Positions 21,296 to 60,857 of a stretch of 64,000 nt of DNA are shown here, piece by piece (the stretch's first letter is position 1; each line of letters begins with the position of its first letter). Source of the DNA: Podarcis gaigeae (Eukaryota); NCBI GenBank assembly GCA_964106915.2, contig OZ066916.1. One strand, 5' to 3'. The notes under the pieces are model-generated. The model saw only the letters and a program-made list of their open reading frames with translations, had not been told where the DNA came from and did not search any database. A program made the translations under genes and the position numbers.

Positions 21296-21621
21296 CATGG
21301 GTAGGTAAACTAAGGCCCGGGGGCGGGATTCGACCCAATCACCTTTTTAATTCGGCCCGTGAACGGTCTGGGAATCAGCGTGTTTTTACACGAGTAGAAT
21401 GTGTCGTTTTATTTAAAATGCATCTCTGGCTTATTTGTGGGGCCTGCCTGGTGTTTTTACACAAGTAGAATGTGTGCTTTTATTTAAAATGCATCTCTGG
21501 GTTATTTGTGGGGCATGGGAATCCGTTCTTTCTCTCTTTTTTTTCAAAATATAGTCTGGCCCCCCACAAGGTCTGAGGGACAGCGGACCGGCCCCCTGCT
21601 GAAAAAGTTTGCTGACCCCTG
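21296..21621. mobile_element. hAT-Charlie non-autonomous element (OposCharlie1/OC1-like)
   Basis: termini catgggtaggtaaact / agtttgctgacccctg; subterminal ctgtccctcagacc...ggccagactata; degenerate 8-bp TSD cacacaag/aacatgag; internal tandem duplication of about 65 bp. Confidence 0.85.
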
Positions 21622-22210: not shown

Positions 22211-22530
22211 TTCTTTCTTCTTCTTTGGCAATCACTCGTAACCGAGTAAATTTGTCTTCCGTAAACACGGTTTTAGCAATGAGTCTGTAAGTGAATGTGG
22301 AGGCCAATTCTGGATCCACACGTCCTTCCGCAGTGGGGACATTGGTTTCCTGGCGGGAGTTGATCACAATGTGGATTTGCCAAGCATGCCTTCCTCCTAG
22401 GTTTCTCCCTTGCTTCCTGAGTTTGAGTGTCTTCAAAGCCCATGACACCTTTGGTAAAGCTGTTCTCCAACTGGAGCGATCACAGGCCAGTGTTTCCCAA
22501 TTGTCAGTGTTTATACTACATTTTTTTTGC
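22211..22530 (-). mobile_element. RTE-clade LINE 3' fragment (non-Bov-B family)
   Basis: encodes C-terminal C2H2-like CPHCGRTCGSRIGLHIHLQTH; (GAA)n tail; same family as 59985-60904. Confidence 0.9.
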
Positions 22531-22740
22531 CACTAGTAGAGCCACACCCAGACCTTTTTAGCATTTGCAAGGGCACTGCACTGTGTGACATCAGACTTGG
22601 GCCTGGGACTAGAAATATATACCGTAATGGGAGTCATTGATAGTTGATGCTCCATGTAGGGTTGCCAGTTTTTCAACCGTAGTGCCTTCGTCAGCAAGAA
22701 TTCTCAGGTGAAGCTTTTTCCACCATAAATGTAAGGATTA

Positions 22741-23660
22741 AAGGTAAAAGGTAAAGGGACCCCTGACCATTAGGTCCAGTTGCAGATGACTTTGAGGTTG
22801 CGGCGCTCATCTCACTTTATTGGCTGAGGGAGCCGGCATACAGCTTCCAGGTCATGTGGCCAGCATGACTAAGCCGCTTCTGGCGAACCAGAGCAGCACA
22901 TGGAAACGCTGTTTACCTTCCCACCAGAGCAGGGGCGGCGACTTATAAAAAATATTGGGGGGGCCCATACCGGGGTCCTCGCCAAAAGATCCTGGCTGCG
23001 GGGCGCAATTCAGGAGGGCTCGGCTGGCCGGGCCCAGGCCCGCGGGGCTCCTCCGCGCTCCCCTCCCCCGGCCGGGCAGCGCCTGCAAAGGCTGCGGGCT
23101 CCGCTGCACCTCCGTCTCTCTTTCCACTGGTAGCGAGAGCGGGTGGGAGGAGGCCACCCGGGAGCCGGAACCGGGCACCAAATAAGGAGAGCGGGGCGGG
23201 CCTGGATCCTGGCCTTGTTTGGCGCTTCCCCATGGCCGGTGGCCCAGCCAAACTCGCGGCGGCGGCAAGGCGATGCCCGCGCAGGGAGGCGCCCACCCCT
23301 CGGCCCCCGCCCGGCGCTGCCGCCCCAGCACCTGCCCGCTCCTCCCAAGGGGCCTCCTCTCCCTCCCGCCTCTTCGCAGCAGTAATATAATTTTCTTAAA
23401 TTATTGGGGGGGCAGAGCCCCCCCAAATGAATTTTTGAGGGGGCTCGGGCCCCCTCAGGCCCCATGGAGTCGCCGCCTATGCACCAGAGTGGTACCTATT
23501 TATCTACTTGCACTTTGATGTGCTTTCGAACTGCTAGGTGGGCAGGAGCAGGGACCGAGCAACAGGAGCTCACCCCGTCACAGGGATTCAAACCACTGAC
23601 CTTCTGATCAGCCTAGGTTTAACCCACCTGTGGTTTAATCCACAGCACCACCCGCATCCC
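22741..23660 (-). mobile_element. full-length Sauria SINE interrupted by a hAT element
   Basis: (AAGGTA)n tail at 22741, head ending ...cccgcatccc at 23660, 13-bp TSD aatgtaaggatta at 22728-22740 and 23662-23674. Confidence 0.95.
22930..23481. mobile_element. GC-rich non-autonomous hAT-type element
   Basis: TIR caggggcggcgact / agtcgccgcctatg; perfect 8-bp TSD caccagag at 22922-22929 and 23482-23489; CpG-rich core. Confidence 0.92.
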
Positions 23661-23887
23661 TAATGTAAGGATTATCAACTGTGAATTGTTGACAATTCAG
23701 CCCCCTGAAAGGCTACAGTAGCCAATGAAAACTCTAAAGTCACTATTTTCCAAATTAACTTGCCGTAAAGCCAGTTACTCATTAAAGAGGTACAAATTTC
23801 CCCACAGGAGTCAGCAGAGCTGTCATGAAGAACACATCAACACTGAAAACAAATACAGGTGCTATGAGAGATGTTTGGGCTCTTGCA

Positions 23888-24028
23888 GAGCTAGCTACCC
23901 TGTGCCTCTCAAGATGCTGTTGAACTCCAACTCCCATCATCCCAAGCTAGCATGACCAGTGGTCAGGGCTGATGGGTGCTGGATGGAGTCCAACAACATC
24001 TGGAGGGCCACAGGTTAGCTACCTCTTA
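23888..24028. mobile_element. short hAT-type MITE
   Basis: aactccaactcccatcatcc...ggagtccaacaacatctggagggccacaggttagcta with subterminal inverted repeats. Confidence 0.65.
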
Positions 24029-25210
24029 GCCAGGGTGCTGTTTGTGAGTAGGCTTGATTGAAGGATGCACATTATATCTACAGAAAAGACAGAGGTAATG
24101 CCAAACATTGAGGACCCAATCGAGTCAGAGGTAGCAGATATGTAACCCCCCCTTCTGTACACATTACTGATGTGGATGTGCCACTAGGGTTGAGGGTACA
24201 CAGTCCCACCTGCATCATGTTGCTCACCTGGTAACTGGTTGGATGCCTTTTTTGCATATGAAGGGGAACATATATCTGTGTTTGGGGCCACCACTTGTTA
24301 GACCAGACTAGACCAGGGTATTCTACAGTCAAGTTCTTGAAGCTGTGGTGATTTTTCTCTTTTAGGGTTCAGAATACAGTCTGTCCTGGTTTTTCCCCCC
24401 ATCCCATTCTTTTCCTCCTTCAGTCTTCTCTGTGTCTCCATCCCTCCTCCCTCCTCAGGCGAGAGCTCCCCTCACATCGCAGATCCTGACAAGAACTGTA
24501 CCAATATGGGTAACAGCTCAAGTTTCACCAGAGGGAGATTTAGCCCCCCTGCAGGCAACCTTCTTTCCATCCCATCAGCCCTTAATAGTATCCTTTGTTT
24601 CTGCCCCATGGGAGGAAAATAATCCCCCCACATCTTTTCCACACCTGGGTTGGGAAACAGCAAACTTCCATCTCCAATCTGACACCTTGAAAAATGGACC
24701 AATTTGCTGACACATTTTCCCCCTGCAAGGGCTAATGCCAGAATGAATAGGCCTAAAGCCTGTGGCCTTAATTAGTTTGCAAGTTATCAAGCACAAAGCC
24801 CACCTGTTGCAGAATGTAAACAAATGTGCTTCTTCCGTGAACTGCCTGACACAGCCTTCGCCACAGCTCTTGACAATTGCCAGTCCCACACAGGATATAT
24901 GGCTGACAACCTGGAATAGTGGGATGCTACTGCAATGCAGTCTGAGGGAAAGACAGAGGCCTTGGAACCCAGACTGGGTTCAGGGAAGAATTCACTGATT
25001 TTCAGACTGTGCCCTATTTTGTAAGTGGAAGAAATTGGTCCTGCCTTAGGATTTCACTCAGTAATTTCTGGGGATGCCTTATTGAGCCGTTGGTGATTTA
25101 TAATGAAGTTAAAGCTCATATCTTCACAAGGACTATACATAACTCCTATGTCTATTAACACGCATTATCAGAGTAGTGCCAATAAGTAATAACAACAACA
25201 ATATTTATTA

Positions 25211-30497: not shown

Positions 30498-30874
30498 AGG
30501 TAAAAGGTAAGGTAAAGGACTCCTGGATGGTTAAGTCCAGTCACAGGCAACTATGGGGTTCAGCGCTCATCTTGTTTTCAGGCCGAGGGAGCCAGCACTT
30601 GTCCACAGACAGCTGTCCAGGTCATGTGGCCAGCAGGACTCAACCGCTTCTGGCGCAATGGAACACCATGATGGAAACCAGAGCACACGGAAATGCCGTT
30701 CACCTTCCCGCCACAGCGGTTCCTATTTATCCACTTGCACTGACGTGCTTTTGAACTGCTAGGTTGGCAGGAAATGGGATGGAGCGATGGGAGCTCACCC
30801 CATTGTGGGGATTCGAACCGCCGACCTTCTGATCAGCCAGCCCAAGAGGCTCAGTGATTTAGAGCACAGTGCCT
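30498..30874 (-). mobile_element. Sauria SINE (older subfamily with internal extra segment)
   Basis: aggtaaaaggtaaggtaaagg tail, B box gggattcgaacc, inserted into a (TAA)n run. Confidence 0.92.
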
Positions 30875-32749: not shown

Positions 32750-33475
32750 AATAATGATAATAATAATAATAATTTTATTATTTGTACCTGGCCCATCTCT
32801 GGGCAGCTTCCAGAATATATAAAAGCATAAAGGTAAAGGTAAAGGTACCCCTGCCCGTACGGGCCAGTCTTGACAGACTCTGGGGTTGTGCGCCCATCTC
32901 ACTCAAGAGGCCAGGGGCCAGCGCTGTCCGGAGACACTTCCGGGTCACGTGGCCAGCGTGACAAAGCTGCATCTGGCGAGCCAGAGCCGCACACGGAAAC
33001 GCCGTTTACCTTCCCGCTGGTAAGCGGTCCCTATTTATCTACTTGCACCCGGAGGTGCTTTCGAACTGCTAGGTTGGCAGGCGCTGGGACCGAGCAGCGG
33101 GAGCGCACCCCGCCGCAGGGATTCGAACCGCCGACCTTTCGATCGGCAAGTCCTAGGCACTGAGGCTTTAACCCACAGCGCCACCTGCGTCCCTTATAAA
33201 AGCATAGTGAAACCTTAAAAAGCTTCCCTATACAAGGCTTCTTTCAGATGTCTTTTAAAAGTCAGATAACTGTTTATTTCCTTGACATCTGATAGGAGGG
33301 TGTTCCACAGGGCGGGTGCCACTATCGAGAAGGCCCTCTGCCTGGTTCCCTGTAACCTCGCTTCTCACAGTGAGGGAACTGCCAGAAGGCCCTCGGAGCT
33401 GGACCTCAGTGTCCAGGCTGAACGATGGGGATGGAGACGTTCCTTCAGGTATACTGGGCCAAGACTGTTTAGGAC
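32750..33475 (-). mobile_element. L2 3' fragment interrupted by a Sauria SINE
   Basis: (TAA)n tail at 32750-32773; 33207-33475 is near-identical to 17850-18105. Confidence 0.9.
32830..33193 (-). mobile_element. young full-length Sauria SINE
   Basis: A box tggcgctgtgg and B box gttcgaatcc on the minus strand, CpGs retained, (ACCTTT)n tail, 12-bp TSD tataaaagcata at 32818-32829 and 33195-33206. Confidence 0.96.
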
Positions 33476-49657: not shown

Positions 49658-49794
49658 CAGGAATGGGAAACTGTTGATCCTCATGTGCTGTTGGACTCCA
49701 ACTCCCATCAGCCTCATGAAGCATGGCCAATGGTTAGGGATAACAGGCGTTGTAGTCCAATAACATCTGGCAGTCATAAATTCCCCCATCCCTA
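49658..49794. mobile_element. short hAT-type MITE
   Basis: caggaatgggaaa ... ttcccccatcccta; TSD ggttagac/aattagac; internal ggactccaactcccatc/gttgtagtcca inverted repeat. Confidence 0.7.
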
Positions 49795-51602: not shown

Positions 51603-52302
51603 CCGTAAGTATTCAAAAAATGTATGCTATCTCTCGTCACACACCACCCTTCCTCTTTATGGCAGTCCAGTCCATTCAGAAATTTCAGAATTATACCTTA
51701 ATTGTGCCATAAAGGTGAGGCACCATGGTGGCCGCCACAGCAGAAAACAGCTCCTGAACCGAGCCAGAGTAAACGGCTCTGGCTGGCTGGCTCCTGGGCT
51801 GCTAGGACTGCTGCCGCCTGCGCCGATAGGAGAGAAGAATCGGGGGCGCCCGGTGCGTCTATCAGAGGAGCCGAACCCCCCCCCTCCCCATTACCTTGAT
51901 CAAGCTGGGCACTCACCCAACAACCCAGAGGAGCTCCAGGACCAGGAGGACCACGGAGCTAATGCGAAGAGGGGGAAGGAAAGGGGGAAAGAGAAAGAGA
52001 GAAAGAAAAAGGAGTCCCAACCTTACTGTTGCTGCTGCCATCGCTGCCGCTGATGGGAAAGAAGAGGAGAGTACGCACCACTGAGGAGACTGCGGGAACC
52101 CCAGAGAAGCCCTCAAGACACAACCCAGATGGGACACAAATGACTGCCTAATCCAGACGCTCTGTAAAAGCCACCAGTCAACAACGCCTGTGCAGCTCAG
52201 CAACATCCAGGAACCACCACCGCCACCACTCCAAATCACAACACCCTCCTCCCCAAGAGGACATCAAGCAGTCCTTAAACCAAAAACATCAGTGAGACTG
52301 CA

Positions 52303-53258
52303 TTGACACCAACCAGGGAGATGGCAAACATCACTGAGAACACAACACACACACCCCACCAAGATGAGAATGACACAAGAACAAAACAAGAACTGAAGGA
52401 AGTGAAAACAAGACTAACAGAACTACTGAAGGTGTTTAGTGACCTGACCTCCAAAGTGGAAACTCTAGAAAACAAGAACCAAATACAAGAAAGAATAATA
52501 GAGGAGTACCGAGAGAAAAACACACGTGTGAATAATAAGTTGGCTGAACTAGAAAGCCACCTGGAAAGAATAGAAACGGAAAACACAGAAATGAAAATCA
52601 AACAAGCAGACCTCAAAGATTGCGGTAGATGCTGCAACATCCACTTCTGCAACTTTCCTGAAAAAGTGGAGGAGAAAACCCCAGCAAACCTAATTGTTCG
52701 CTGGCTGAAAAATACTATCCCAAACCTGGCACTCAAGGTAGATGACCTGGGGAGGGCTCACAGAGCCCTAAAACCTATGCCGAACCCCCCCCCCCCCAAG
52801 AGACATCATTGTAATAATAATAATAATAATAATAATTGTGTGCTTCACACCCTACAAAAAGAAAGGTATGGAACAACCTCAGAAACTCAACCAACCTTCG
52901 ATATGGAGACAACCCAATATTGGCCTTACAGGATTTATCTCAGGACACCCTAAATCGGAGGAAAAGCCTACGCCCATGCACCCAGCATCTCCAACAAGCA
53001 GGGATCAAGTACCGATGGGGCTTCCCCTTCTGCCTCATTGTAACAACCAACAGAGCACAACACATGGCTACCAACATACCCAACGTTGGCGTCACAAAGA
53101 CGCTTAACACCGTCTCACTGACCACCCCCTATTGCAAACGACAGGGAGGACGGCCTGCCCCTGAACCAGGCCCTCCACACCAGCTGAGACTTAGAACCAA
53201 CCGACTAAACACCAGAAGGCCCCCAAAACCCCAAAAACACCTATATGACTACATATAG
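52303..53258 (+). pseudogene. L1 ORF1 remnant (coiled coil + RRM/CTD), frameshifted
   Basis: heptad-rich region, DLKDCGRCCNIHFCNFPE (DLENRSRRNNI..PE-like), RAHRAL, LQDLSQDTLNRRKSL..., IKYRWGFPF; (TAA)n insertion at 52812-52836. Confidence 0.85.
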
Positions 53259-53379
53259 GATACTCTCTATAATTTACCCCCAACTCTTTAACCCAAATCT
53301 AATCCTAATCCCACTAGTCCCCCACCCACAACACGCTAGGTCAGTGCAACCCATTGGTTCGTTAAACAACACAAAGTTG

Positions 53380-54911
53380 GGCCCACAGGTAAACTTTGCA
53401 AAGTCAGAAGCTATGTGCTTCAACACCCCTCCTCACACCCAAAAAGAACTCACTAATGTCACCAAAATAAAACTTTGCCACACCAAGTTCAGATACCTAG
53501 GGGTACAAATAACCAGAAACCTCAATAAATTGTACCTCCACAACTACAAGCCCCTGTGACAACAAATGAACAAAGACTTAAAGAGATGGAACAACATGAA
53601 TTCCACTCTTTCAGGCAAAATAGCCATGATCAAAATGATCACCCTCCCAAAATTAACCTACCTATTCCAAACCCTCCCAATCTGGATTCCCCCAACCCAA
53701 CTCCGCAGATGGCAGAGAAAACCACACTCTTTTATCTTTTCACATAAAAACCAAGAATAAGCCCCAAATACCTGCACCTCCCCACCTCAGAAGGAGGATG
53801 GGGAATCCCCAACATAGAAGCATATTACATTGCCAACCAAATACGCCATATAATCCCATATATACTAGAAGATGAGACAAAACCATGGATACACTTAGAG
53901 AGGAACACAATTGAAAATACCTACACCACAGCATACCCACTCCTACCAAACTAACTAAGGAAAATTCCCACAACATTTAACAGGTACACACAGACCATGC
54001 TCAAAACATGGAAAACAGAAATAGGCAAACTATCCCCAACCCCATCCCCAATAATTCCCCATGTGTACCACCCATTATTCCACCATGCAGCACAAAACCT
54101 CCAGATAAAAACCTGGCAAACCAAAGGCTTCTATCGCCTAATAGACTTCTATAAAAATAACAAACCTTTGTCAACACAAGAAATACAGGACAAACTATAA
54201 GACTATAAGATACCCAAATGCCTTGGTTAGCACAACACCAATTACATGCCCTCTTAAACAATCCAGCAGTAAAATCAGCAGTAACTAGGCCCCTGACAAC
54301 CTTCGAAAACCTTCTCCTAACAACAAAGGGACACGGTAAAGGGATGGTATCTGCAGTATACAAAATACTACTCCAAAATCCCACGAACCTCCTAGACACA
54401 ATCAAAAACCAATGGGAGGATGACATAGGCTATGAGATTAACCCCACTCAATGGACCAGAATGTGGTCTAAACCCCCCCCCCCCTTTAAATCCATATCAA
54501 CGAAAAGAAAAGAATTCACTCTGAAACTCACCTACAGGTGGTTCCTTAAAACCCAGAAAACTATGTAAAATAACTAAGCATGTATTAGCATTCACCCCAG
54601 AATTGACCCTACTAAACATCTTCCAAGACAATAATGCCCACAAAGAACTCATAACCCACCTACTTTCAGCAGCCAGAAACATCATAACCAGACACTGGAG
54701 AGACCAGTCAGGAGTAAGCATGGACCAATGGTACCAAATAGTATGGGAAACAGCCTTACTAGAAAAATTAACTAATAAACTAAAACTGACACGGGGACAA
54801 ATAGAAGAAGATGCCTTCACCCCGGTATGGCTCCCCTTTATCACACACACAGCCCAACAAGACAATGACAAAAATCCACCAACAACATACAAATCAAGAT
54901 GGCTAACCTGA
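53380..54911 (+). pseudogene. L1 ORF2 C-terminal remnant (late RT/thumb onward), with stops and frameshifts
   Basis: VNFAKSE, FRYLGVQIT, LSGKIAMIKMITLPKLTYLFQTLP, GGWGIPNIEAYYIANQ, WEDDIG, LLSAARNIITRHW. Confidence 0.88.
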
Positions 54912-55569
54912 TCCAAAACACCCACCCACCCCACTCACACATGTAAACAAAGATCACCACAACCAATCACAAATAAACAACCACACCCTAGGCCAACCCC
55001 AACCTCTCTCACCACCAAAGGAACACAAGTGAACAGCAGAGAACCTGCACAAGCAACGCTGACACAAAACCCCACATATATGAAGTAAAATAGAAATATC
55101 GCCACCCCACCCCCACTCACCTTTCCCCCTCTACCTCTTTCCCCCTTTTCTTCCTAATGTCTCAACAAATGAAACTGATCTGTAAAAAATGTTACTTGAA
55201 AAAAAGAGAGAGACATTGCACATACTTTTGTAAACCAAGAAAATCTTTAATAAAAATAAAATAAAATTGTGCTATAAATGTGTGAACCCTCCGGGAGATA
55301 ATTCATAGACTTGTACAGGAAAGAAGAAACCATCATTTGTAATCAATATCCAATTAATTCCCTAGGCTTAACAATTTCCGCAATGATTAAAAAAACCTCC
55401 TGCACTAGAAATATTGTCTTCAGATAGCCCTACTGAGCCCAGGTTTTCTGTAGGACTGACCACTAGAATTATAGCAACTAAACACATGAATAATGCTGCA
55501 TTCATCTGTCTGTCTGTCTGTCTGTCTGTCTGTGTATCATCTATCTATCTCCCATCAATTTATTAGTGA

Positions 55570-59984: not shown

Positions 59985-60857
59985 TAGACAAACCAAAATG
60001 CTTGTTTACAAAGCTATTGTACTACCAACCTTACTGTATGCTTGTGAAACATGGACCACTTATAAACGCCATCTCCAACTCCTCGAAAGATTCCATCAAC
60101 AGTGTCTCCAGAAATTTTTACATGTCACTTGGGAATACAGGTGAACTAATACCAATAACACTAATACTGGAAGAAGCAAAGATCACCAGTGCTGAAGCAA
60201 TGATTCTTCAACATCAACTTTGTTGGACTGGTCATGTTGTTCGGATGTCTTCCAAAGCAACTACAGTGGTACCTCAGGTTCAGACACTTCAGGTTACAGA
60301 CTCCGCTAACCCAGAAATAGTACCTCAGGTTAAGAAATTTGCTTCAGGTTGAGAACAGAAATCGCGCAGCAGCGGTGTGGTGGCAGCGGGAGGCCCCATT
60401 AGCTAATGTGGTGCTTCAGATTAAGAACAGTTTCAGGTTAAGAACAAACCTCCAGAACGAATTAAGTTCTTAACCCGAGATACCACCGTGTAATGCTGGA
60501 AAGTGTAATGCTGGTGGTCAACAAAAAAGGTTTAAAGACAAGGCAATTTTTTAAAAAATGTAGTATAAACACCAACAATTGGGAAACACTGGCCTGCGAG
60601 TGCTCCAATTGGAGTACAGCGTTTACCAAAGGTGTCATGGGCTTTGAAGACACTCGAACTCAGGACGCAAGGGAGAAATGTGCTTAGAGGAAGGCACGCT
60701 TGGCAAATCCACACAGTGATCAACTCCTGCCCAGAAACCAATGTCCCCACTGTGGAAGGATGTGTGGATCCAGAATTGGCCTCCACACTCACTTGCAGAC
60801 TCATTGTTAAAACCGTGTTTATGGAAGACAATCTTACTCTGCTATGAGTGATTGCCA

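What the first reader, a model, noticed from the sequence alone, without database searches (positions are those of the whole stretch)
22922..23489. Pack-type hAT element carrying a CpG-island-like core with an ETS + CArG + GC-box cluster
Seen: a 552-bp insertion inside a Sauria SINE, so it is younger than the SINE and demonstrably inserted. It has TIRs (caggggcggcgact / agtcgccgcctatg), a perfect 8-bp TSD caccagag, AT-flanked poly-G subterminal motifs and no transposase. The roughly 400-bp core is extremely GC-rich, non-repetitive and keeps about 45 CpGs by hand count, in an otherwise CpG-poor window. Within 60 bp it has CCGGAA (23165-23170), a perfect CArG box CCAAATAAGG (23178-23187), GGGCGGG (23194-23200) and a one-mismatch CArG CCTTGTTTGG (23213-23222). 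Established: an 8-bp TSD indicates hAT; ETS next to CArG is the SRF/TCF serum-response-element architecture of immediate-early gene promoters; Pack-type transposons capture host DNA. Inference: a non-autonomous hAT captured a host CpG-island promoter fragment and may be dispersing SRF-responsive modules. This is the best candidate for a novel system in the window.
Basis: partly seen in the sequence, partly recalled or inferred. Interest (0 to 1): 0.78.

Follow-up and report, generated by a model that had tools for sequence, protein, structure and literature searches.

The report
Cargo-carrying hAT transposon copy in lizard
A 552-base cut-and-paste (hAT-type) transposon with about 405 bases of CpG-rich, promoter-like DNA sits inside a lizard SINE; it is one slowly decaying copy of a family with tens of copies, and neither the origin of its cargo nor any regulatory role could be shown.

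Summary
A 552-bp insertion (22930-23481) lies inside a SINE. It has a perfect 8-bp target duplication, 12/14 inverted ends, G-run subterminal hairpins, no transposase, and a 405-bp core with 74% GC, 40 CpGs and CpG o/e 0.73. The four motifs are at the stated coordinates.

New here, from public-run contigs laid on the locus:
- **Ends:** they belong to a family of several thousand copies in three related lizards.
- **Core:** it is about 50-100 times rarer than the ends. It has roughly 35-115 copies in the window's species, 8-35 in a relative about 1% diverged, and 1-2 in one about 6% diverged.

So this is cargo on MITE ends, and the whole unit has amplified recently. It is not a unique capture. 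This copy differs from the family majority mainly by CpG-to-TpG/CpA changes, as methylated, unprotected DNA does.

No TIR-less donor could be sought with these tools, so host-promoter origin is plausible but unproven. The CArG+ETS pair is unlikely from composition alone (P about 0.0005), but it was picked post hoc and has no functional support.

This scan already reported what appears to be the same 552-base family on another chromosome (s1-701446). Pack-hAT elements are known in vertebrates, although multicopy ones are rare.

Verdict: a new member of a known kind, of modest interest.

The parts
22736..22929 (+). Left part of the host SINE, ending in the target octamer
   Evidence: Aligns with SINE copies at 8901-9222(-), 32828-33193 and 30498-30838. 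Very high word depth in all runs.
22922..22929 (.). Left copy of the 8-bp target-site duplication CACCAGAG
   Evidence: Identical to 23482-23489. Intact SINE copies have a single homologous octamer.
22930..22943 (+). Left terminal inverted repeat CAGGGGCGGCGACT
   Evidence: Matches the right end at 12/14. Word depth equals several thousand copies in three lizards. The family majority has C at 22938.
22944..22979 (+). Left subterminal region, AT-rich and then the G-run motif (AAATATTGGGGGGGCCC)
   Evidence: Direct-repeat family D1, copy 22950-22974. High-copy depth ends at about 22976-22985.
22980..23384 (.). GC-rich, CpG-rich cargo (core); about 405 bp with no tandem repeat, protein domain or RNA family
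   Evidence: GC 0.74, 40 CpG, o/e 0.73. Depth is 50-100 times lower than the ends but 35-115 times single-copy in the window's species. No match in Pfam, Rfam or the protein word search.
23165..23222 (+). Motif cluster: CCGGAA, perfect CArG CCAAATAAGG, GGGCGGG and CArG-like CCTTGTTTGG
   Evidence: Positions confirmed. In shuffles, CArG P=0.009, CArG within 30 bp of an ETS core P=0.0005, ETS alone 0.31 and GC boxes 0.41. No listed family variant inside the motifs (the list is incomplete).
23385..23467 (+). Right subterminal region with two G-run/C-run hairpins (23404-23426 and 23436-23457)
   Evidence: DNA fold -26.7 kcal/mol, z = -4.2, 0 of 200 shuffles as good. D1 motif copies at 23399-23423 and 23430-23454. 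Depth equals several thousand copies.
23468..23481 (-). Right terminal inverted repeat (AGTCGCCGCCTATG on the + strand)
   Evidence: The family majority has G at 23473, the mirror of the difference at 22938.
23482..23489 (.). Right copy of the target-site duplication CACCAGAG
23482..23660 (+). Right part of the host SINE

Best explanation
This is one copy of a young, multicopy, cargo-carrying non-autonomous hAT transposon of wall lizards. Its two ends are the 14-bp TIRs plus about 35-85 bp of subterminal G-run motifs and hairpins. They come from a MITE family present in several thousand copies.

Between the ends lie about 405 bp of foreign GC- and CpG-rich DNA. Its likeliest source is a host CpG island that came to lie between two transposon ends (inferred, not shown). 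A hAT transposase supplied in trans recognises the ends and cuts and pastes the whole unit, making 8-bp target duplications. In this way the unit reached tens of copies in the window's species.

The copy in the window landed in a SINE. Since then it has behaved as ordinary, probably methylated, neutral DNA that is losing CpGs. Its CpG richness reflects high GC content and youth, not protection as a working promoter.

Shown here: the insertion anatomy, the excess of ends over core, the multicopy state of the core, and CpG-biased decay. Inferred: trans-mobilisation, host origin of the cargo, and lack of function.
For: - **Anatomy:** perfect 8-bp TSD, 12/14 TIR and a SINE interrupted at a single octamer. 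Three subterminal repeat copies and two perfect hairpins. No transposase domain.
- **Single-copy baseline:** flanks have summed word depth of about 77-100 in X1 (0 differences to the window, so the same species), about 16 in X3 (about 1% diverged) and about 9-15 in X12 (about 6% diverged).
- **Depth at the ends:** 340,000-635,000 in X1, 51,000-69,000 in X3 and 40,000-76,000 in X12, which means thousands of copies.
- **Depth over the core, bins 23020-23379:** 2,800-9,200 in X1, 130-550 in X3 and 13-23 in X12. One 105-bp X1 contig has depth 1,610 and only 4 differences, which points to a recent burst.
- **CpG decay:** of 8 core positions where all laid X1 contigs differ from the window copy, 4 are CpG in the family and TpG/CpA in the window. 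Counting 23428, it is 5 of 9. That is 4 of 44 CpGs lost, against 4 changes in about 320 other bases.
- **Leads only, not evidence:** the scan's notes describe another 552-letter hAT with the same kind of cargo on another chromosome, and several other CpG-island captures by hAT MITEs in this genome.
Against: - Summed word depth of Logan contigs is only a rough proxy for copy number. The tool itself warns of this.
- No individual second copy with its own TSD was seen here.
- No TIR-less donor was found or could be searched for. The core might be the family's own internal sequence and not captured host DNA.
- The list of variant positions is truncated (155 rows not shown), so the CpG-decay count rests on few sites.
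- A CArG next to an ETS core is improbable from composition and appears unchanged in the family. A regulatory effect of some copies is therefore not excluded.
Confidence: 0.72

Rival explanations
1. It is an ordinary internally deleted hAT-N family. On this reading the GC-rich core is the element's own ancestral internal (non-coding) sequence, and the thousands of short MITEs with the same ends are further deletion derivatives. Nothing was captured from the host.
For: No donor, exon or protein domain identifies a host source.
Against: - Internal parts of hAT elements are not normally 74% GC with CpG o/e 0.73 (background knowledge).
- The core is 1-2 copies in a relative where the ends are as abundant as in the window's species. 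This fits a late acquisition better than an ancestral interior.
- There is no trace of transposase coding sequence.
- As a lead only: scan notes report many different GC-rich cargoes on hAT MITE ends in this genome.
Confidence: 0.2
2. It is a functional dispersed regulatory module. On this reading the cargo keeps promoter or enhancer activity through SRF (CArG) and a ternary-complex ETS factor. Copies would put nearby genes under serum or immediate-early control, and the CpG richness would be maintained by protection from methylation.
For: A perfect CArG lies 7 bp from a CCGGAA core, with a GC box and a second CArG-like site within 60 bp. In dinucleotide shuffles of the core, P is 0.009 for a CArG and 0.0005 for a CArG plus ETS within 30 bp. 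No family variant is listed inside the motifs.
Against: - The motif pair was chosen after seeing it, out of hundreds of possible pairs.
- ETS core and GC boxes occur at chance (P 0.31 and 0.41).
- Conservation among copies only a few percent diverged says little.
- The window copy shows CpG-biased decay.
- The RNA run laid on the locus shows at most about 4x read depth in any core bin, all with 10-12 mismatches and no clustered starts.
- The copy sits inside a SINE, with no exon evidence nearby.
Confidence: 0.05
3. It is an artefact or chance: an assembly chimera, or a fortuitous inverted and direct repeat around a GC-rich patch.
For: None beyond the general possibility. No single laid contig spans the whole stretch.
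Against: - The TSD is perfect and the TIR pattern is well above chance.
- The SINE is interrupted exactly at one octamer.
- Both the ends and the core are found in independent runs of three organisms.
Confidence: 0.02

Closest known systems
Pack-TIR / Pack-hAT elements of animals (Tan et al. 2021, PMC8277862), e.g. Pack-hAT-N8_XT carrying 291 bp of the CAPSL 5' UTR in Xenopus
   Same: Both are non-autonomous hAT elements whose ends flank a few hundred bases of unrelated GC-rich, gene-start-like DNA, moved with fresh TSDs to several sites. hAT is the commonest carrier in animals (208 of 370).
   Different: The parental (donor) locus that defines a Pack-TIR was not identified here. The copy number inferred here (tens to about 100) far exceeds the multicopy cases in that survey: only 4 of 370 were multicopy, and the frog example had 3 copies. 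The paper's main text does not mention lizards.
Plant Pack-MULEs and Pack-CACTA
   Same: They share the principle of TIR transposons carrying captured host fragments. Pack-MULE cargo is also GC-rich and biased towards the 5' ends of genes (background knowledge; PMC5861414 listed, not read).
   Different: They belong to a different superfamily with a 9-bp (MULE) or 3-bp (CACTA) TSD and long TIRs. Plant cases have identified parental genes.
Other cargo-carrying hAT MITEs noted by this scan in the same wall-lizard genome (s1-701446, s1-686464, s1-663188, s1-656164, s1-692058, s1-670733)
   Same: All are hAT ends with an 8-bp TSD and CpG-island or first-exon-like cargo. s1-701446 is 552 letters long with a 'serum response element module', so it is very probably the same family at another locus.
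   Different: These are unchecked AI notes, and I could not read their sequences. For some, a donor gene (PKD2, TAF1C) was reported; for this family none was.
Serum response element of immediate-early gene promoters (SRF plus ternary complex factor, as in c-fos and EGR1)
   Same: A CC(A/T)6GG box lies next to a GGA-core ETS site, in a GC-rich context with an Sp1-type box.
   Different: This is sequence resemblance only. No binding, inducibility, transcription start or orthology to any immediate-early gene was shown.

Membership tests
hAT superfamily, non-autonomous element | 8-bp target-site duplication | tested here: met
   CACCAGAG at 22922-22929 and 23482-23489, identical. There is a single octamer in intact SINE copies.
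hAT superfamily, non-autonomous element | Short (about 10-25 bp) TIRs beginning (C/T)A(G/A) | tested here: met
   CAGGGGCGGCGACT and CATAGGCGGCGACT (reverse complement of the right end), 12/14 identical.
hAT superfamily, non-autonomous element | Target consensus nTnnnnAn | tested here: inconclusive
   In the TSD CACCAGAG, position 7 is A (fits) and position 2 is A (does not fit). A single site cannot decide this (consensus from background knowledge).
hAT superfamily, non-autonomous element | An autonomous partner with the same ends that encodes a hAT transposase | not testable with these tools
   No eukaryotic genome search was available and there is no hAT transposase in the window. The scan notes mention hAT transposase genes in this genome, as leads only.
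Pack-TIR (Pack-hAT) | The same termini also exist without this internal sequence, so the interior is cargo | tested here: met
   Depth of the ends is about 50-100 times that of the core in X1, and over 2,000 times in X12.
Pack-TIR (Pack-hAT) | The interior is not derived from the transposase or autonomous element | tested here: inconclusive
   No Pfam domain in six ORFs, no protein relatives of similar length and no coding periodicity of note. The non-coding sequence of the autonomous element could not be compared.
Pack-TIR (Pack-hAT) | A parental, TIR-less copy of the interior in a host gene | not testable with these tools
   This needs BLASTN against the lizard assembly. The only hints come from X12: a second homologue about 12% diverged, and a few RNA reads 7-8% diverged.
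CpG island (Gardiner-Garden and Frommer criteria) | At least 200 bp, GC at least 0.5, CpG o/e at least 0.6 | tested here: met
   406 bp, GC 0.74, o/e 0.73.
CpG island (functional sense) | Kept unmethylated in the germ line, so CpGs do not decay faster than other sites | tested here: not met
   4 of 8 core differences from the family majority are CpG to TpG/CpA in this copy. That is about 9% of CpG sites against about 1.3% of other bases. The numbers are small and the variant list is truncated.
Serum response element (SRF/TCF) | A CC(A/T)6GG box with an adjacent ETS GGA(A/T) site | tested here: met
   CCGGAA at 23165-23170 and CCAAATAAGG at 23178-23187. Joint P is 0.0005 in shuffles, but this is post hoc.
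Serum response element (SRF/TCF) | SRF/TCF binding and serum-inducible transcription | not testable with these tools
   This needs ChIP or a reporter assay. The RNA run showed no transcription start in the element (table 6: none).

The most novel reading that the evidence does not exclude
A recently, and perhaps still, active Pack-hAT of wall lizards has copied a host CpG-island promoter with a working SRF/ETS module to about 100 sites. Copy number differs 5-10 fold between taxa only about 1% diverged. This would make it the most prolific gene-start-carrying DNA transposon known in an animal, and a natural experiment in rewiring genes to immediate-early control.
Probability: 0.06. Interest if true: 0.7.

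Novelty: new member of a known kind. Interest (0 to 1): 0.35.

Why it matters
Captured-DNA ('Pack') transposons are a known route for shuffling gene starts. In animals nearly all described cases are single-copy: 4 of 370 were multicopy in PMC8277862. A cargo-carrying hAT unit with tens of copies, whose copy number appears to rise steeply between closely related wall lizards, would show two things. First, cut-and-paste elements have been active very recently in squamates. Second, they can spread CpG-island-like DNA widely. That makes the family a usable marker system (presence/absence among Podarcis lineages). It also allows a modest test of whether dispersed promoter fragments acquire function. 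As a single locus, though, this copy looks inert.

Tried and rejected
- **Second copy in the window:** none. Only the element's own TIRs match at up to 2 mismatches, and BLASTN of the element against the window finds only itself.
- **Protein origin of the core:** Pfam on six ORFs gave nothing. The word search with the 151-aa ORF gave no hit among 1,388 candidates. That search sees only proteins of 83-264 aa, so it says nothing about longer proteins.
- **ATG at 23232:** rejected as a captured start codon. The family majority reads TCG there.
- **Coding periodicity:** weak and ambiguous.
- **Large HMMER search:** not run. No credible coding frame exists, any putative exon would be about 36 low-complexity codons at most, and the operators asked for economy.
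- **rDNA or other structured RNA as source:** no Rfam match in the element even at E up to 1. The single-copy depth of the core in X12 also argues against rDNA.
- **Presence/absence polymorphism:** the many joints skipping about 560 bp (table 5) come from the several hundred thousand paralogous SINE copies that lack the insertion. They confirm the empty-site structure but say nothing about alleles at this locus.
- **Expression:** the RNA run (X23) is from a species where the core has 1-2 copies. It gave read depth of at most about 4x per core bin, all with 10-12 mismatches. This is no evidence either way for the window's species.
- **Scan's findings searched by sequence:** blank.
- **Collection scans:** metagenome, bacterial-genome, viral, phage and plasmid collections were not scanned. 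They hold no lizard DNA, and exact short patterns would return only noise.

Full report
**1. The observation**

- The element spans 22930-23481 (552 bp) and is flanked by identical CACCAGAG octamers at 22922-22929 and 23482-23489.
- The ends CAGGGGCGGCGACT and, in reverse complement, CATAGGCGGCGACT agree at 12 of 14 positions. With up to 2 mismatches the pattern occurs only at these two places in 64 kb, against 0.10 expected.
- The two halves of the surrounding SINE (22736-22929 and 23482-23660) align end to end with three other SINE copies in the window. Each of those has a single octamer where this one has two. So this is a true insertion with an 8-bp target-site duplication.
- The element holds 46 CpGs. 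The core 22980-23385 has GC 0.74, 40 CpGs and CpG o/e 0.73, against 0.28 for the window.
- All four motifs are at the stated coordinates.
- No ORF of the element has a Pfam domain, and no Rfam family matches the element.

**2. Anatomy of the ends**

A motif of the form A(A/T)TNTTG(G/A)GGGGGC occurs three times in direct orientation: 22950-22974, 23399-23423 and 23430-23454 (family D1). At the right end it forms two perfect stem-loops, 23404-23426 and 23436-23457. Their DNA fold is -26.7 kcal/mol against -15.8 ± 2.6 for shuffles, z = -4.2. The left end has no significant fold. Subterminal repeats of this kind are where hAT transposases bind in Ac/Ds and relatives (background knowledge). I take them as the cis-signals for mobilisation; this is inference.

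**3. What public reads add**

I laid Logan contigs of three DNA runs and raw reads of one RNA run on 22300-24099.
- X1 matches the unique flanks with 0 differences, so it is the same species, possibly the same sample. Its single-copy word depth is about 77-100.
- X3 differs by about 1% and has single-copy depth of about 16.
- X12 differs by about 6% and has single-copy depth of about 9-15.

Depth at the element's ends is enormous in all three:

| Position | X1 | X3 | X12 |
|---|---|---|---|
| 22938 | 585,919 | 51,383 | 45,575 |
| 23428 | 634,645 | 64,081 | 75,697 |

These figures mean several thousand copies. Over the core (23020-23379) depth falls to 2,800-9,200 in X1, 130-550 in X3 and 13-23 in X12. 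That is roughly 35-115, 8-35 and 1-2 copies. Normalising to the SINE depth in each run gives the same ordering.

The tool warns that summed word depth is not a copy number, so these are orders of magnitude only. The contrasts are large, however. The ends are 50-100 times commoner than the core, and the core is itself clearly multicopy in the window's species. One 105-bp X1 contig with 4 differences has depth 1,610, about 20 identical copies.

Hence the core is cargo on the ends of an abundant MITE family, and the whole unit has multiplied recently, mostly after the split from the ~6%-diverged species. It contradicts the idea of a unique element.

**4. State of this copy**

At eight core positions every laid X1 contig differs from the window: 23012, 23078, 23099, 23232, 23233, 23254, 23267 and 23287. 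At four of these the family has CpG and the window TpG or CpA (23012, 23078, 23233, 23267). A fifth such case is 23428 in the right end. That is about 9% of CpG sites lost, against about 1.3% change at other bases. This is the signature of methylated DNA, not of a protected CpG island.

The ATG at 23232 is one of these private changes (the family reads TCG), so it is not a captured start codon. The variant table is truncated (155 rows hidden), so the counts are minimal and the sample is small.

**5. The motif cluster**

In 20,000 dinucleotide-preserving shuffles of the core:
- a perfect CArG appears in 0.9%;
- a CArG within 30 bp of CCGGAA/TTCCGG appears in 0.05%;
- an ETS core alone appears in 31%;
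- three or more GC boxes appear in 41%.

The CArG+ETS pair is therefore unexpected from composition. It was noticed after the fact among hundreds of possible motif pairs, however, and near-identical young copies cannot show selective conservation. No molecule start clusters in the element (table 6). The RNA run comes from the species with only 1-2 core copies, and it gave at most about 4x read depth in any core bin, each read with 10-12 mismatches. There is no functional evidence either way; I rate a regulatory role at about 5%.

**6. Where the cargo came from**

I could not search a lizard genome.
- The protein word search with the longest ORF found nothing. It is blind to proteins outside 83-264 aa.
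- Codon-position GC shows only a weak, ambiguous periodicity.
- The only ancestral ATG on either strand of the core is at 23273, followed by about 36 low-complexity codons and a weak GTAATA donor-like site at 23381. This is too little to search with profit, so I did not spend the large HMMER job.

First, in X12 there are two homologues: one is about 4% diverged at single-copy depth, and one is about 12% diverged with a GCGGCG insertion, and the few RNA reads are 7-8% diverged. The more diverged, possibly transcribed locus could be the donor. Second, an X3 contig of depth 130 follows the core from 23231 to 22976 and then continues for 146 nt unlike the window's left end. That could be a different left junction or a graph chimera. 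Host CpG-island origin therefore remains the likeliest reading (about 50-55% overall) but is unproven. The rival, that the core is the family's own interior, keeps about 20%.

**7. An unexplained detail**

The window copy has G at 22938 and C at 23473. These are the mirror-image position in the two TIRs, where almost all laid contigs have C and G. Either the cargo-carrying lineage descends from a minor TIR variant, or the two ends were homogenised. Depth of the window's variant is low (about 1,400 and about 170), and contigs drop rare variants, so I draw no conclusion.

**8. Comparison with what is known**

Tan et al. 2021 (PMC8277862) found 370 Pack-TIRs in 100 animal genomes. Of these, 208 were on hAT ends and only four were multicopy. 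One example is 291 bp of the CAPSL 5' UTR on hAT-N8_XT, in three copies. The present element works like these. It cannot be filed as a Pack-TIR, because the defining parental copy was not tested. If capture is confirmed, tens of copies would be unusually many.

This scan's own notes are unchecked leads. They say the genome is a wall lizard's and that the phenomenon recurs there. Another 552-letter hAT with a 'serum response element module' lies on another chromosome (s1-701446; its follow-up also failed to trace the cargo). There is a similar 523-letter note (s1-686464), and captures of PKD2 exon 1, the TAF1C gene start and unidentified CpG islands are also recorded. These agree with my depth-based finding that the unit is multicopy. 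I could not read their sequences.

**9. Verdict**

- It is a new member of a known kind, already met by this scan elsewhere in the same genome.
- Interest is 0.35, mainly for the apparent recent, lineage-specific amplification.

Noticed in passing
window 23890-24022: A palindromic MITE of about 125-130 bp folds into one long hairpin (-67.9 kcal/mol) and is flanked by TAGCTACC on both sides. It gives sub-threshold Rfam hits on both strands to miRNA families (mir-5408 30 bits against gathering score 90; MIR2950). Word depth is about 2 million in X1, meaning tens of thousands of copies. A diverged copy lies at 49686-49770.
   Followed up: partly
window 22300-22540 and 60553-60783: Another high-copy repeat (word depth about 1.5 million in X1) ends about 200 bp upstream of the host SINE. 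A second copy at 60553-60783 on the minus strand is 90% identical.
   Followed up: partly
window 32828-33193: A SINE copy still holds about 30 CpGs per 400 bp (o/e 0.85). It is the only other CpG-dense patch in the window, so CpG density alone does not mark a promoter here.
   Followed up: partly
window 22938 and 23473: The two TIRs of this copy carry mirror-image differences (G and C) from the family majority (C and G). This could be a minor TIR variant lineage or homogenisation of the ends; it is unexplained.
   Followed up: partly
window 21380-21514: A 71-bp unit is tandemly duplicated (1.9 copies, 93% match).
   Followed up: no
window 22976-23231 (X3 contig 22): In the ~1%-diverged relative, a contig of about 8-copy depth follows the core and then continues for 146 nt unlike the window's left end. 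It may be a different left junction, a longer parent or the donor, or it may be an assembly-graph chimera.
   Followed up: no
window 52303-52953: An ORF with weak coiled-coil-type Pfam hits (ATG16, HAUS1; below cut-offs) lies inside the L1 noted by the scan at 51700-55278. This is consistent with an L1 ORF1 coiled coil.
   Followed up: no
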